Below, piece by piece: positions 10,201 to 28,055 of a stretch of 64,000 nucleotides of DNA (position 1 is its first letter; the number at the start of each line of letters is the position of its first letter). The DNA lies in contig NW_027266286.1 in assembly GCF_022045235.1 (NCBI RefSeq), positions 46,500,001-46,564,000 of the forward strand, given 5' to 3'. Below the pieces are notes generated by a model, which saw only the letters and a program-made list of their open reading frames with translations, was not told where the DNA came from and searched no databases. This stretch comes from Haliotis cracherodii. Taxonomy: Eukaryota. Made by a program: the position numbers and the translations under genes.

Positions 10201-11602
10201 TACAAGGAATATGTATATCAGCATCAGTCAGCCTTTATTAACCGGTTTGTATCGAACTTTAACAGTTTATTTGTCCTCTATGTCAGCAAGATTACTTCCA
10301 TTAATACTATTACTGCTAAATGTTATGCAGTCAGTATAACGAAATTCGGACAACTATTTCCAGATGACGTTTTGTTGATGTTGGATAATAAATACACCAT
10401 CTTATTTAATAGTCATAGTACAATTCAGTGTAACTACCGCACTATCACTGCTCCTGTTGAGATATCATACTTTGTTTAACACCATGAACATTATACAGCT
10501 ACAAACATAACCATTATAATTTGAAAAGCCAAAGTATTTAATTGTAGGGGCGGGGGTGTAACCTACTGGTTAAAAAGTTCGCTCGTGAAGGCCCAAGGTC
10601 GATTCCCCATATGGGTACAGTGTGGTGCGTCCCTCGCCATGATATTGCATGAATATAACAAAGAGTGGCGTACAGCCACACTCACTCATTTATATACTGT
10701 AACTACGATATGTCTGTTAGTGTTAGTGCAACATGTCTGGACCGGAAAGTTGCAGCATCACATGCGCCAATCCGCTTTTTGATAACTGATAAACGGGACG
10801 ACCGTGAGTGACAGACAAGCATTTGTATGACGTACCAGGATGTTATGAGATAATAGCTCAAAACCGATGTGGCTGCGTGCTCAGTTAACCAGGTCACTGA
10901 TACCAATGACTACTGATTTCTGCACAATCACAAGAGAAACGACATTTCGCTGGGGTTTTTTTTTGTATGTGGTAGTGTCAAGAGTTTTGCTCTAAACGCT
11001 TCTATCTCCTCTGACTGGAATTCCATAATGCCATATATCGTCATGAAAAGACGATTGACGTGTTTACATCCATACACAGTCAGGGAAGTAAGTACCAATG
11101 TCACAACCAGGAAAATGTATAATGAATAGGAGTATGTATAAAACAGATGAGTCTGGAAACCTTTACCAGTAATAGGTTTTAAATACCAAAATGTTTACAT
11201 TTCTCTCAAAGAAAGACATATAACGGATACTAAACGGTTGACGTCCAACATGTGATGAAAATCCTCATTGTGACGATATACCAGATATCCCGTAATAATA
11301 GCGCGCGACGACATGATATAAAATGAGATTTCATATGAGATCAACAATGTGACTCACCATTAAGACATCATGTACATAACTACATTTTCAAACACCCCCA
11401 AGTAAGAAATCAACACAATAGCCAGCTGGTCTCTTACCACCTCACTTATTATCGTATTGAAGCAACTCATTTCCACTAGCTTTCTGTAAGAGGTCACTGT
11501 AAAGATGTCCCAGTAATTAGAATCCATTAAAACCTCACCTGCATGAGTCGCTTGAAGCATGTAGAACACACAGGCGATCGCAATGTGACTCCAGTAGTTC
11601 AT
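934..11602 (-). CDS. Gene A: type-I membrane receptor with signal peptide, divergent SUEL/Gal_Lectin-like domain, S/T stalk, TM and Tyr-rich cytoplasmic tail (~367 aa, spliced)
   Basis: Phase-compatible GT-AG exons: 11602-11539 (MNYWSHIAIACVFYMLQATHA, phase 1); 4988(or 4979)-4668 (VQTSKAC...LSC..TISICDAYY..C..C..RCSTQTEC..SVLKYQCIK); 3976-3932; 2501-2393 (TM GAIIGGVVVSVLAASVATFVLV-RLIRK); 1498-934 (tail with 11 Tyr). The sum of 1104 nt is in frame. The domain name is inferred from Cys spacing and the terminal V.Y.C. Confidence 0.8.
2795..3015 (-). mobile_element. Adjacent fragments of two SINE-like families
   Basis: ttttagcaatattccagcaatatcac...gaaccc recurs at 17719-17819, 42188-42325, 44035-44110. 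caaccaagtcagcgagcctgaccaccc recurs at 41455-41662 and, inverted, at 56755-56900 and 61618-61765. Confidence 0.65.
3206..3312. mobile_element. ~107 bp MITE, PIF/Harbinger-type
   Basis: TIRs GGCCCACTTGCACAAA...TTTGTGCAAGTGGGCC extend into cttagcgctaag; flanked by the 3-bp direct repeat CTG (3203-3205, 3313-3315). Confidence 0.7.
5449..5670 (+). mobile_element. Crypton-like tyrosine recombinase (DUF3504-type) C-terminal remnant
   Basis: LRATSI*AMNDAGFEVRQIMYVSGSRNEASIRSYNR matches the H.LRAT...IM..SGH....S...Y motif. In-frame stop and the catalytic His is replaced. Confidence 0.65.
5933..6058. repeat. 126 bp near-perfect hairpin
   Basis: tttgttgacgttcatcagctgatgaagacagt...actgtcttcatcagccgatgaacgtcaacaaa; arms about 55 bp. 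Confidence 0.85.
7386..8140 (+). mobile_element. Degraded Tc1-like transposon (5' part)
   Basis: MPRLTEAKRNN at 7624; TQTVRNRFRAEGICARR; RRRVNWRRGERYARNCIQEVDGFGG; many frameshifts. Confidence 0.75.
8165..9673 (-). mobile_element. Tc1 (DD34E) transposon, full length but pseudogenised
   Basis: 24-bp TIRs tactgaacagcattgaaaacgcac (8165-8188, 9650-9673); ATG at 9356 (MPRLTVEERERALGML); FSDESRF and QQDNARAH-(34)-PIEHLW; in-frame stop and frameshifts. Confidence 0.92.
10550..10690 (+). mobile_element. Short tRNA-derived SINE with (ACTC)n tail
   Basis: ggggcggggg..tggttaaa..gttcgctcg..ggtcgattcccc head; same family as 17719-17819 and 42188-42325. Confidence 0.6.
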
Positions 11603-12489
11603 GGTCGCAGTGGGAGTATTTCACTCTCCCTCTTCTAAGGTAGGGAGTTGTAAAAGGCGAAGGAAAGTCACAGTACCGCGCGTTTGCTGTATATTTCTGC
11701 CCACTTCAAACTGGGTGTGCATAGCAATGACACTACGTAATTATATAATTCCACACAGGGAACGAGCGCGTCTTTTCAGTAAAGCTCTTTTAGAAAGTAG
11801 CCCAGAAGTCGGAAACAACGCACTTCGCTTTGCACAGTGCCGTCCTTTAGGACCTTGGGTTCGATATAAAAATACCCCATGACAATAACCCTTTGATTGT
11901 AAGCAGAATACATGTGTTCGTGAGTTTCCCCAAAGAAGTAAACATCTAAGGCTTACATCACTTTGGGCTTCGTTCCATGTTAAACTCGCAAGTCGACACA
12001 TAACCAAAATACTAATGTAATGTTCAAAGCCGCATGAAAAACCTCTCACCCTTTCAACTATCCATATACATATTCATATGATTGTTAGACACAGCATAGA
12101 CATGCCCCTGATCTCACGTTCTGTGGTTTTAATGTTAACTTGCACAAAACTTTAGATAGTAGTATTATCCTTTATCTGAACAGGGTCAAGACAAAACACC
12201 TGAACCTTAACATTCGGGGCGTTTAGCTCAATCGTTCCCACAGACCCAGACTATTAATGAATCATGAATATGAAGGGACATCTAATAATTCTCCGAGGGA
12301 ATATTTCAGTTTTAAATTGTCAGCTTTACAGAGAAATACAGCAAGTAAAAGACGTTTACGACCCCTGAGAAACCCACCAGCACGTACACATAATGCTGTG
12401 AGAACAGCTATTATAATAAGGGAGAATCGGGGATACCAAACCATGATGAGCGAAATCACGATCGAGTTGAGTAACTCATAACATACAAA

Positions 12490-13983
12490 TATACTCACAC
12501 GCAAAAGAAACGCAAGTGGTTTTAAGCAAATAGGTAACAAACACGGAACCATAAATTGATACGAGATTTAGCATGTAGTGACGCCTGATGGTGTTATCAA
12601 CATTCTTGGTTGCATTTTGGAATCCCCGAGTAAAAACGCAACATAAAAAACGAATCGCCAAAACGCACCATTTCAATGAATATGTGGGTATCATGCACCC
12701 ATTTCTCGCAAAATGTAGTGGGTATAAAACTGTTGCCGATTCTTGGACCTGCCTCTACTTTGTCAACAATGCCAACAAAACTCAAATTCAGAGAAACCAG
12801 GCTATCGGACGTTTGGAAGCTGGAGAGTCTGTTAACACAACCACAATTTACCGTCTCCTGCATCGATACAATGCCACACAGACCACAGATAACCTTCCTC
12901 GGGTCGGTCGTCCTAGGGTCACCACACCTCGACAAGATCGGCAGATTACCCGTCAACACCAGCGACATCCGTTCCTAACTGCAAGTGAAAGTGCCCGACA
13001 GAACATAGGAACACATAATCGACACATTAGCCGGGACACTGTGATCCGACGTCTCCGTTCCAACAACCTCAGATGTCGCCGACCAGCACGTCGTCCTGTT
13101 CTCCAACCACGGCATCGACATGCACGACTTCAGTGGGCACAGGGTCATCACAATTGGCGTCATGGTGAGTGGAAGCATGTCATCTGCACTGATGAAAGTA
13201 GCTTTTGTGACTCCCATGCAGACTGAAGAGTCAGAATTTAGCGGCGTCGAGGTGATCGTTTCGCTGACAGAAACGTTGTGGAAAGGGATCCATGGGGTGG
13301 ACCTAGCGTCATGATATGGGCAGGGATTGGACTTAATGCGAGACTTGGACCCATGTGCTTTCTGAATGTTGGTCAAGGTCGGGGACTCGGCGTCACTGCT
13401 CAGCGGTATATCGACCAAGTGATCAGACCCCACGTTGTTCAATTTTTTGCACATCAACAACACATTTTCCAGCAGGACAACGCTCGTCCCCATGTTGCCA
13501 GAGCTACCATGGCCTTTCTGCAACAACACAACATCCGTGTTCTACCGTGGCCATCCCTCAGCCCTGATCTGAACCCCATCGAACACTTGTGGGATGAGGT
13601 TCAAAGGCGTCTGCACCATGTGCACCCAGTCCCTACACCCGCATATGAACTACGCACAGCTGCTCTGGATGTGTGCAGGAGGATCCATAGGGCCTTCACA
13701 AATCGCATGATCCACTCAATGTACAGGAGATGTGTGGCAGTGATCAATGCTAACGGTGGTCACACCAGGTATTGTCTGACATTTTGGGTATTGACCCGAA
13801 ACTGAGTAAGCCCTTTTCATTTGAAAAAAAAAACAATTAGGTCATCTGCCTTTTAATCCATTAAACTGTCTTCAGTCATTTTTTTGTCAATCTTGCCAAT
13901 ATAGTATTTCTTGTCTTTACTGTTGAAAATAAATAACATGTATACTGCATACCCGACTTGCGTTTCTTTTGCGTGTGAGTATA
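12490..13983 (+). mobile_element. Tc1 (DD34E) transposon, pseudogenised, distinct subfamily
   Basis: TIRs tatactcacacgcaaaagaaacgcaagt at both ends including TA; ICTDESSF and QQDNARPH-(34)-PIEHLW; stop at 13224-13226. Confidence 0.92.
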
Positions 13984-27900: not shown

Positions 27901-27991
27901 TATTCTGTTGAAGCGATACGTATCCACTAGCCTTCAGTAAAAGGTCACTGTGAAGGTGTCAAAGTATTTTCGAATTCATTATAAACCTCAC

Positions 27992-28055
27992 CTGCATGAG
28001 CCACCCGAAGCATGTAGAACACACAGGCGATCGCGATATGACTCCAGTAGTTCAT
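27992..28055 (-). CDS. Leader exon L4 (close paralog of gene A exon 1)
   Basis: MNYWSHIAIACVFYMLRVAHA G|gtgagg; 64 nt, phase 1. Flanks 27908-28079 align with 11457-11627. Confidence 0.75.

What the first reader, a model, noticed from the sequence alone, without database searches (positions are those of the whole stretch)
11539..28055. Tandem array of four homologous signal-peptide exons upstream of a single receptor body
Seen: four minus-strand mini-exons, each with an ATG, a 19-21 aa leader and a phase-1 GT donor. L1 11602 MNYWSHIAIACVFYMLQATHA; L2 17717 MNYWRFIVISDCILREVYA; L3 21562 MDLWSLIASLFYILHTVHT; L4 28055 MNYWSHIAIACVFYMLRVAHA. They share M.[YL]W; three also share FY.L...H[AT] before the donor. 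I found no intact ectodomain, TM or tail exons between them, mostly transposon debris, so the only phase-1 body I found downstream is gene A (4988). Inference: a variable-first-exon/constant-body locus (protocadherin/UGT1-like logic) in which the variable part is a cleaved leader, so it would diversify promoters or ER targeting rather than the mature receptor. Alternative: 5' relics of deleted paralogs. All four keep ATG, frame and donor despite strong divergence, which favours function.
Basis: partly seen in the sequence, partly recalled or inferred. Interest (0 to 1): 0.85.

Follow-up and report, generated by a model that had tools for sequence, protein, structure and literature searches.

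The report
Stacked leader exons beside abalone receptor
At the edge of a black-abalone cluster of lectin-type receptor genes lie six, not four, copies of the small first exon that encodes the secretion signal; they look like leftovers of lost neighbour genes, at least one is probably now used by the surviving gene, and the red abalone annotates two such exons as alternative starts of one gene.

Summary
L1-L4 sit exactly where stated, on one strand, all phase 1, and are homologous in exon and proximal promoter.

- L0 (6359-6428), 1.37 kb upstream of exon 2.
- L0' (about 14122-14196), a decayed copy.

The window is Haliotis cracherodii. Gene A is the upstream-most of 13 tandem paralogs: single-pass receptors with a SUEL/rhamnose-binding-lectin-like ectodomain.

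Each leader type is attached to a real body in another species. In H. rufescens RefSeq, an L3-type and an L1-type leader are annotated as alternative first coding exons of one gene (LOC125373362). That body has no ortholog in this assembly.

RNA contigs join gene A exon 2 to an exon more than 1.86 kb upstream, so not L0. I could not read which one.

L2 is split by a SINE and has a poor hydrophobic core. L0' has lost its core. The contigs also carry a 53-nt exon that breaks gene A's frame.

Best reading: an inherited leader stack, loss of the cognate bodies, and capture of a distal leader by gene A. The alternative-leader logic is supported for the family but unproven for L2-L4 here. Interest is moderate.

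The parts
27992..28055 (-). L4 leader exon, MNYWSHIAIACVFYMLRVAHA, phase-1 donor G|GTGAGG. L1-type. Intact.
   Evidence: 91% identical to the L1 exon
28088..28105 (-). L4 proximal promoter box ACTTCCTTGTAGGCGGCC, 50 nt upstream of the ATG.
21505..21583 (-). L3 leader exon (ATG 21562, in-frame upstream ATG 21583), MLALQTK-MDLWSLIASLFYILHTVHT, donor G|GTAAGC. 24/26 residues identical to the leader of H. rufescens XP_048240343.1 (P0014).
   Evidence: only copy in the genome
17660..17717 (-). L2 leader exon, MNYWRFIVISDCILREVYA, donor G|GTAAGA. Hydrophobic core interrupted by D, R and E. Closest to the leader of the paralog at C23:21.389 Mb (P0002).
17718..17819 (-). tRNA-like SINE fragment with an (ACTC)n tail, inserted after codon 4 of L2. 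12-bp target-site duplication ATGAATTATTGG at 17820-17831 and 17706-17717. The upstream ATG copy now opens an 8-codon uORF (MNYWGAVG*).
14122..14196 (-). L0' decayed L0-type module: MTMCMSCWKYISKQYYASPSNPSK, hydrophobic core lost, about 57-nt deletion just after the donor position, promoter box only partly kept (14225-14235).
11539..11602 (-). L1 leader exon, MNYWSHIAIACVFYMLQATHA, donor G|GTGAGG. The most likely first coding exon of the gene A transcripts (inferred).
6359..6428 (-). L0 proximal leader of gene A by position (1.37 kb upstream of exon 2) and by type (H. asinina XP_067675501.1 leader MAVCLSWWKYIPVLCFTVQSVKT): MSSCLRCWKCITVLCFTLHSVNT, weak donor G|GTCAGG. Promoter box carries ACTTCT instead of ACTTCC (6456-6473). 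No RNA contig on it in 4 runs.
   Evidence: only copy in the genome
4668..4988 (-). Gene A exon 2: SUEL/RBL-lectin-like ectodomain, acceptor AG at 4989-4990, phase 1 in and out. Covered by RNA contigs that run 84-97 letters further 5' into sequence not found in 850-6849.
3932..3976 (-). Gene A exon 3 (45 nt, TSTPFNNTCEQVQTK).
3646..3698 (-). Gene A exon 4 (53 nt). Present in the RNA contigs next to the TM exon. Its length shifts the frame, so the TM exon then reads into a stop.
2393..2501 (-). Gene A transmembrane exon (QIETTTNTGAIIGGVVVSVLAASVATFVLVRLIRKR).
934..1498 (-). Gene A tail exon: tyrosine-rich cytoplasmic tail, stop at 934-936. Spliced to the TM exon in RNA contigs.
8269..9365 (-). 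Tc1/mariner copy inside the L1-to-exon 2 interval.
12588..13805 (+). Tc1/mariner copy between L0' and L1.

Best explanation
The four exons are real promoter-plus-leader modules of a Haliotis family of single-pass receptors: signal peptide, one SUEL/rhamnose-binding-lectin-like domain, a TM helix and a tyrosine-rich tail. They lie at the upstream edge of a 13-gene tandem array and belong to a stack of six modules of four leader types.

Steps of the proposed history:
1. Stacked leaders used alternatively already existed at this locus before this genome. This rests on RefSeq models in H. rufescens, where an L3-type and an L1-type leader are first coding exons of one body, and two L1-type leaders of another.
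2. In the assembled H. cracherodii haplotype those cognate bodies are gone (birth-and-death loss). The absence is shown; the deletion is inferred.
3. The next in-phase acceptor downstream is gene A exon 2. Gene A transcripts start from an exon more than 1.86 kb upstream of exon 2, not from the proximal leader L0 (shown at 90% likeness). That exon is most likely L1, so this is first-exon/promoter capture (inferred).
4. L3 and L4 are intact and could be used in the same way (untested). L2 (SINE in its start, charged core) and L0' (core lost) are decayed relics.

Because the leader is cleaved at the exon junction, any effect is on where, when and how much the gene is expressed, or on ER targeting, not on the mature protein.
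For: - Exons and homology.
- Array of 13 minus-strand paralogs ending at gene A.
- Paralogs carry their own leader 0.7-1.9 kb upstream.
- L0 sits in that canonical position and is of the leader type of the most gene-A-like protein, P0004.
- H. rufescens isoform pairs differ only in the leader.
- The window L3 extended ORF matches the P0014 leader at 24/26 residues.
- L3 is the only such copy in the genome.
- The P0007 body has no ortholog here, best identity 64%.
- No body relics lie between the leaders.
- RNA contigs in 4 runs from 2 studies are spliced (TM exon to tail exon). They cover exon 2, run 84-97 letters further 5', and put zero depth on 6250-6649, which holds L0.
- Lesions in L2 and L0'.
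Against: - The letters of the 5' part of the exon 2 contigs were not shown, so L1 versus L3 or L4 versus an unknown exon is open. The only hint is that the contigs fit the last 6-7 intron letters (A)ATGCAG, as L1 and L4 (CATGCAG) would.
- The RNA runs differ from the reference at the same places in both studies (about 4% in exon 2). They may come from a sister species or a divergent haplotype.
- The H. rufescens isoforms are computational RefSeq models.
- Absence of the cognate bodies could be a haplotype-specific deletion or an assembly collapse.
- Exon 4 breaks gene A's frame in the contigs, so the captured body may itself be dying.
Confidence: 0.55

Rival explanations
1. A maintained variable-leader/constant-body locus. 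L1, L3 and L4, and perhaps L2, are all active alternative promoters and first exons of gene A. They give one mature receptor under several regulatory programmes or with several ER-targeting efficiencies.
For: - All leaders are in phase with exon 2 and have consensus donors.
- The promoter box is conserved, with an intact ACTTCC core in L2, L3 and L4 and a variant ACTTTCC in L1, but a mutated core (ACTTCT) in the unused L0.
- The sister species annotates L3-type and L1-type leaders on one body.
- H. rubra LOC124265724 X4 and X8 show different leaders before the same first 40-plus ectodomain residues; I compared only the first 70 residues.
- Gene A exon 2 uses a distal first exon.
Against: - No junction evidence for L2-L4 here.
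- In each of 4 runs the exon 2 contig runs on unbranched for 84-97 letters. This suggests one dominant leader, although contigs drop rare forms.
- L2 carries a SINE plus a uORF and a charged core.
- The leaders' cognate body in H. rufescens is a different gene, absent here.
- Gene A's frame is broken by exon 4.
- The ACTTCC core is missing from the aligned promoters of three paralogs, two of them RefSeq-annotated (A1), so it is no proof of activity.
Confidence: 0.22
2. Assembly or haplotype artefact. L3 and L4 have their own gene bodies in the species, as in H. rufescens, but these are missing from this assembly through collapse of a repetitive array or because the sequenced haplotype carries a deletion.
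For: - The P0007-type and P0010-type bodies exist in the sister species with these leader types and are absent genome-wide here.
- The region is rich in repeats and satellites.
- Tandem receptor arrays are commonly copy-number polymorphic (general knowledge).
Against: - There is no N run between 11.5 and 28.1 kb; the nearest is at 31070.
- The missing bodies are not on any other contig.
- L1, L2, L3, L4 and L0 have no further copies elsewhere in the genome that would mark a displaced segment.
Confidence: 0.15
3. Chance open frames: the four mini-exons are coincidental ATG...GT strings in repeat-rich DNA.
For: Generic 'ATG + hydrophobic stretch + GT' candidates are frequent: 69 on the minus strand (4,989-64,000) with loose criteria.
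Against: - The specific motif occurs 4 times on the minus strand and 0 times on the plus strand.
- DNA-level homology among the four and to the leader exons of annotated paralogs, including the promoter box.
- L3 and L1/L4 peptides recur as annotated leaders in H. rufescens.
Confidence: 0.01

Closest known systems
Haliotis rufescens LOC125373362 (XP_048240343.1 / XP_048240344.1) and LOC124130087 (XP_048240346.1 / XP_048240347.1)
   Same: Same receptor family and the same leader types. One body has an L3-type or an L1-type leader as alternative first coding exon, and the other body has two L1-type leaders. The isoforms are identical downstream of the leader.
   Different: Those bodies are only 50-54% identical to gene A's ectodomain by the search (52% for P0007 against this genome) and have no ortholog in this genome. 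They are RefSeq models whose RNA support and exon order I could not inspect.
IgLON genes Lsamp, Ntm and Opcml: twin promoters 1a/1b with alternative signal-peptide first exons (PMC5288359); the same paper cites BDNF
   Same: Alternative promoters each bring their own first exon encoding a signal peptide. After cleavage the mature protein is identical, so the diversity is regulatory.
   Different: Those have two unrelated first exons per gene and are conserved across mammals. Here there are up to six homologous, paralog-derived modules in a fast-evolving tandem array. Some are decayed, and use of more than one is unproven.
Clustered protocadherin and UGT1A variable-first-exon loci (general knowledge)
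   Same: A row of homologous first exons, each with its own promoter, upstream of shared downstream exons.
   Different: There the variable exon encodes the functional part of the mature protein: the ectodomain plus TM, or the substrate-binding domain. Here it encodes only a cleaved leader. Not a member.
SUEL / rhamnose-binding lectin (Gal_lectin) domains, for example the latrophilin Lec domain, CSL3 and SUL-I
   Same: The predicted fold of the gene A ectodomain matches them: mean pLDDT 79, Foldseek E 1e-4 to 6e-3, probability 1.00, TM 0.54-0.60. There are 8 conserved cysteines (A2).
   Different: No Pfam hit at E <= 1 and only 15-21% identity. Sugar binding is untested. The architecture, one domain plus TM plus a Tyr-rich tail, is not that of latrophilins or the secreted egg lectins.
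Orphan or relic first exons left by birth-and-death turnover in tandem receptor arrays (general knowledge)
   Same: Homologs with bodies exist elsewhere, there is no cognate body in cis, and some copies carry disabling lesions (L2, L0').
   Different: L1, L3 and L4 carry no lesion, and at least one distal module appears to be in use by the neighbouring gene.

Membership tests
Alternative-first-exon locus with alternative signal peptides (IgLON 1a/1b type) | Two or more first exons, each with its own promoter | tested here: inconclusive
   Six modules share a promoter box plus a leader exon. Promoter activity is not testable here.
Alternative-first-exon locus with alternative signal peptides (IgLON 1a/1b type) | Transcripts in which each first exon is spliced to the same second exon | tested here: inconclusive
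   Exon 2 is joined to one distal, unidentified upstream exon in 4 runs. No data for L2-L4. The feature is met only in H. rufescens RefSeq models of another body.
Alternative-first-exon locus with alternative signal peptides (IgLON 1a/1b type) | Identical mature protein after leader cleavage | tested here: met
   All leaders end in phase 1 with G before the donor, so the split codon and everything downstream are the same. The cleavage site at the junction is inferred from -3/-1 residues, not predicted by a tool.
Protocadherin / UGT1A-type variable-exon cluster | The variable exon encodes a functional part of the mature protein | tested here: not met
   The variable exons encode only 19-26 residue leaders.
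Relic 5' ends of lost paralogs (birth-and-death) | The leader type has a cognate body in relatives, but none in cis or elsewhere in this genome | tested here: met
   L1, L3 and L4 types sit on P0007, P0010, P0014 and P0015 in H. rufescens. No ortholog of that body here. No body relics in the window.
Relic 5' ends of lost paralogs (birth-and-death) | Disabling lesions in the orphan exons | tested here: inconclusive
   Met for L2 (SINE, uORF, charged core) and L0' (core lost, deletion). Not met for L1, L3 and L4.
SUEL / rhamnose-binding lectin domain (Pfam PF02140 Gal_Lectin) | Sequence match to the family profile | tested here: not met
   No Pfam family at E <= 1 apart from chance-level hits.
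SUEL / rhamnose-binding lectin domain (Pfam PF02140 Gal_Lectin) | The alpha/beta fold of the RBL domain with its disulfide framework | tested here: met
   The AF2 model (pLDDT 79.4) hits latrophilin Lec, CSL3 and SUL-I with E 1e-4 to 6e-3 and TM 0.54-0.60. 8 invariant Cys.
SUEL / rhamnose-binding lectin domain (Pfam PF02140 Gal_Lectin) | Rhamnose or galactose binding | not testable with these tools
   Needs a glycan-binding assay.

The most novel reading that the evidence does not exclude
Promoter-plus-leader cassettes behave as semi-independent, heritable modules in abalone lectin-receptor clusters. They stack, are used alternatively (as annotated in H. rufescens), outlive the bodies they were born with, and are captured by the next surviving body. 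Paralog death would then rewire the expression of the survivor without changing its mature protein. Two unchecked first-reader notes of stacked 67-nt leader exons elsewhere in this genome would make this a recurrent feature.
Probability: 0.3. Interest if true: 0.6.

Novelty: new member of a known kind. Interest (0 to 1): 0.4.

Why it matters
If L1, L3 and L4 really alternate on gene A, this would be a clean natural case of first-exon/promoter capture after paralog loss. It would show how a fast-evolving receptor array can change regulation while the mature protein stays the same. It would also be a mollusc counterpart to the IgLON and BDNF type of alternative signal-peptide exons.

It has practical value for annotating abalone genomes. 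The proximal leader L0 looks canonical but is not the one in the transcripts, and gene A may be a transcribed, frame-broken gene that gene-prediction pipelines skip.

It also defines an uncharacterised Haliotis family: a SUEL-lectin-like domain, a TM helix and a Tyr-rich or short tail, in a 13-gene array. This family is a candidate for recognition functions.

If only L1 is used, the finding is ordinary gene-cluster debris.

Tried and rejected
- **Relic bodies.** tblastn with gene A exons and a 14-paralog HMM against all six frames found nothing between 11.6 and 45 kb.
- **Reading the leader from RNA.** The single read-laying run was centred on the acceptor (850-6849). The loose-end table was filled by SINE-derived rows, and the letters at 4995 were not listed. 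No second call was allowed.
- **Annotated gene A protein.** Three homologous-protein searches found none: exon 2, the longer exon 2 open frame, and P0004. Several other array members are also missing from the hits, so this absence is weak evidence.
- **Whole array.** Only exon-centred 3-kb loci and two small stretches were read.
- **Pfam.** Ectodomain, tail and TM exons gave no family.
- **ETS-like ACTTCC core as a sign of promoter activity.** Rejected as evidence, because the aligned promoters of three paralogs, two of them RefSeq-annotated, lack it (A1).
- **Stacking at the other family locus (C23:21.389 Mb).** There is one proximal leader and none further in 8 kb.
- **Gapped identities of flanks.** Uninformative: random flanks reach about 70% with many gaps.
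- **tblastn runs reaching from ectodomain exons into the intron.** Chance-level extensions.
- **Joined gene A protein.** Frames were checked by exon lengths only.

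
Full report
**1. Observation**

The four minus-strand mini-exons are exactly as described:
- L1 11602-11539, MNYWSHIAIACVFYMLQATHA, G|GTGAGG.
- L2 17717-17660, MNYWRFIVISDCILREVYA, G|GTAAGA.
- L3 21562-21505, MDLWSLIASLFYILHTVHT, G|GTAAGC.
- L4 28055-27992, MNYWSHIAIACVFYMLRVAHA, G|GTGAGG.

A pattern scan (ATG, M.[YLFW]W, open frame, phase-1 GT) finds these four on the minus strand and none on the plus strand of the 64-kb window. 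They are homologous, not coincidental:
- L1 and L4 share 58/64 exon letters and 84% over 169 nt.
- All four align with each other and with the leader exons of paralogs (A1; A4, 71% mean column identity).
- The homology extends about 50 nt into the proximal promoter, a box ACTTCC(T)TGTAGRCGRCC lying 44-66 nt upstream of the ATG (A3; coordinates).

**2.

There are two more modules.
- L0 (ATG 6428, last coding letter 6359, MSSCLRCWKCITVLCFTLHSVNT, G|GTCAGG) lies 1.37 kb upstream of exon 2. It has the same promoter box, but with ACTTCT in place of ACTTCC.
- L0' (ATG 14196) is a decayed copy of L0. It still has an ATG, an open frame and a GT at the homologous place. However, its hydrophobic core has become ISKQYYASPSNPSK, and about 57 nt after the donor position are deleted. 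So 'keeps ATG, frame and donor' is not in itself evidence of function.

L2 is also damaged. A 102-nt tRNA-like SINE with an (ACTC)n tail sits between two copies of ATGAATTATTGG (17820-17831 and 17706-17717), which is a target-site duplication that includes the start codon. The upstream copy now opens an 8-codon uORF. The leader's core also carries D, R and E.

**3. Genomic setting**

The window is C23:46,500,001-46,564,000 of a 1.18-Gb assembly. A RefSeq protein that matches a paralog exon of this genome exactly is from Haliotis cracherodii, on a contig of the same length as C23.

Gene A is the upstream-most member of an array of 13 minus-strand paralogs spaced 10-25 kb apart between 46.30 and 46.505 Mb.

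Where the flank was available, each paralog has its own leader 0.7-1.9 kb upstream of its ectodomain exon:
- MTESMIIWICLIFFCCILQPCYT (twice).
- MAKFVIVWQCVTFIYYIILPVST.
- MSVTTLNHWISVCLALCLLLLGVVHM.

The related gene at 21.39 Mb has one leader and no further copy in 8 kb. L0 therefore sits in the canonical position for gene A. The stack L1-L4 is the exception.

Between the leaders there are two Tc1/mariner copies, SINEs and about 171-nt satellites. There is no remnant of ectodomain, TM or tail exons. A distant paralog (gene B) lies on the opposite strand at 45.6-47.1 kb.

**4. What the gene is**

Gene A has these parts:
- Exon 2, 4668-4988.
- Exon 3, 3932-3976.
- Exon 4, 3646-3698.
- TM exon, 2393-2501.
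- Tail exon, 934-1498, rich in DYD-type tyrosine motifs.

Pfam finds nothing. An AlphaFold model of the ectodomain, built on the 17-sequence alignment A2, has pLDDT 79.4. It matches latrophilin lectin domains, CSL3 and SUL-I (Foldseek E 1e-4 to 6e-3, TM 0.54-0.60). The ectodomain is therefore a divergent SUEL/rhamnose-binding-lectin fold with eight conserved cysteines. The relatives found are uncharacterised Haliotis proteins.

**5. Leader types have bodies in other species**

A search of 1.84 billion representatives with exon 2, followed by a look-up of the hits, shows the following.
- The L1/L4 type is on H. rufescens XP_048240344.1 (MNYWSTITCVFHMLQVAHA), XP_048240346.1 and XP_048240347.1.
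- The L3 type is on XP_048240343.1. Its leader MLALQIKMDLWSLIASLFSILHTVHT matches the window L3 read from its upstream ATG (MLALQTKMDLWSLIASLFYILHTVHT) at 24/26 residues.
- The L2 type is nearest to the leader of the paralog at 21.39 Mb (P0002) and its H. rufescens counterpart (P0038).
- The L0 type is on H. asinina XP_067675501.1. This protein is the closest to gene A in the TM segment, where I measured it. It also resembles gene A most in the tail, where I compared the sequences only by eye.

- XP_048240343.1 and XP_048240344.1 are isoforms X1 and X2 of one gene, LOC125373362. They are identical over the last 353 residues and differ only in the leader.
- LOC124130087 X1 and X2 differ only at four positions inside two L1-type leaders.

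So 'several leaders, one body' is annotated at what must be the orthologous place in the sister species, since L3 is a unique sequence in this genome. These are RefSeq models. To my knowledge NCBI's pipeline makes alternative variants only from transcript alignments, but I could not inspect that support.

**6. The cognate body is missing here**

Searching this genome with P0007 gives only paralog-level matches, at most 64% identity. L1 has no copy other than L4, and L0, L2 and L3 have none. There is no N run between 11.5 and 28.1 kb.

The simplest history is that the stack is inherited and its bodies were lost in this haplotype. That leaves gene A exon 2 as the next phase-1 acceptor downstream.

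**7. RNA**

No listed run is on record as RNA. However, contigs of four runs from two studies are spliced. One contig joins 2392-2500 directly to 850-1497. Introns have zero depth.

In each run one contig covers exon 2 up to 4995 and continues 84-97 letters further 5'. The acceptor AG is at 4989-4990, and the extra letters fit the intron's (A)ATGCAG, as a leader ending in CATGCAG (L1, L4) would.

Nothing is laid on 6250-6649, which holds L0. The first exon of these transcripts therefore lies outside 850-6849, so it is not L0 at 90% likeness. The unbranched run of the contigs suggests one dominant leader per run. The tool did not list the letters at this place, so L1, L3, L4 or another exon cannot be told apart.

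There are further caveats:
- The runs differ from the reference at the same places in both studies (for example 13 of 328 letters in exon 2). They may come from a sister species or a divergent haplotype.
- Contigs drop rare forms.

**8. Gene A may itself be failing**

The contigs carry exon 4 next to the TM exon. Two contigs per run cover 3674 and 3682, and 48-52 letters precede the TM piece.

Exon 3 ends in phase 1 and the TM exon needs phase 1, but exon 4 is 53 nt long. Every GT-AG version long enough to fit the contigs has a length of 2 mod 3. With exon 4 included, the TM exon reads into a stop. Only skipping it, the architecture of the H. asinina protein, keeps the receptor frame.

No gene A protein was found in the protein collection at any query length. 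This is weak evidence, since other array members are also missing. The frames rest on exon lengths.

**9. Verdict**

- I commit to this reading at 0.55: an inherited stack, loss of the bodies, and capture of a distal module, most likely L1, by gene A.
- A maintained multi-promoter locus gets 0.22, a haplotype or assembly artefact 0.15, and chance about 0.01.
- The nearest documented mechanism is the IgLON 1a/1b arrangement of alternative signal-peptide first exons, where the mature protein is unchanged (PMC5288359). The protocadherin/UGT1 comparison fails on its defining feature.
- Two unchecked first-reader notes report stacked 67-nt leader exons at other places of this genome. I did not test them.

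Noticed in passing
window 45612-47102 (+): Gene B, a distant paralog of the same receptor family on the opposite strand. Ectodomain exon about 45612-45962 (27% identical to gene A; profile E 7e-9), TM exon about 46260-46390, Tyr-containing tail 46680-47102. A possible leader lies at 44852-44918 (MDRQGRVDFITCTMLMVMASVK, G|GTACGT).
   Followed up: partly
window 3646-3698 (-): Gene A exon 4 (53 nt) is present in RNA contigs but shifts the frame, so the TM exon ends in a stop. Gene A may be a transcribed gene on its way to being a pseudogene, or it may make a truncated soluble lectin.
   Followed up: partly
window 40329-42052 (+): An apparent secreted gene with a leader (MLAHRASVIAALLGAWLLLTPAVS, G|GTAACA) and a C-type-lectin-like stretch by eye (VWLGANDIRFEGYYVWD...YPGEPN...EDC). 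Pfam gave no hit for the 80-residue piece.
   Followed up: partly
window 54323-64000: Tandem duplication with a period of about 4.87 kb (copies 87-100% identical), with an N run in the second copy at 61959-62086.
   Followed up: no
window 2786-3316 and 6077-6128: SINE-like repeats with a (GAGT)n end reach summed contig depths of 1e5 and more in all four RNA-like runs, so this is a very abundant transcribed repeat family. The piece inserted in L2 is of the same family.
   Followed up: partly
window 18236-18728 and 20098-20797: Two short satellite arrays with a unit of about 171 nt between L2 and L3. There is also a 24-nt-period array at 51543-51920.
   Followed up: no
proteins P0020 and P0005 (H. 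rubra LOC124273454 X7 and X8), P0035 and P0036 (LOC124265724): Isoforms of one gene share the N-terminal part (compared over the first 70 residues only) but end either in the long Tyr-rich tail or in a short tail with YxxI/L-type motifs. The family seems to swap cytoplasmic tails by alternative 3' exons.
   Followed up: no
window 12378-12444 (-): A further signal-peptide-like open frame with a phase-1 GT (MVWYPRFSLIIIAVLTALCVRA, G|GTGGGT) lies 0.8 kb upstream of L1. It has no homology to the leader family and is probably chance.
   Followed up: no
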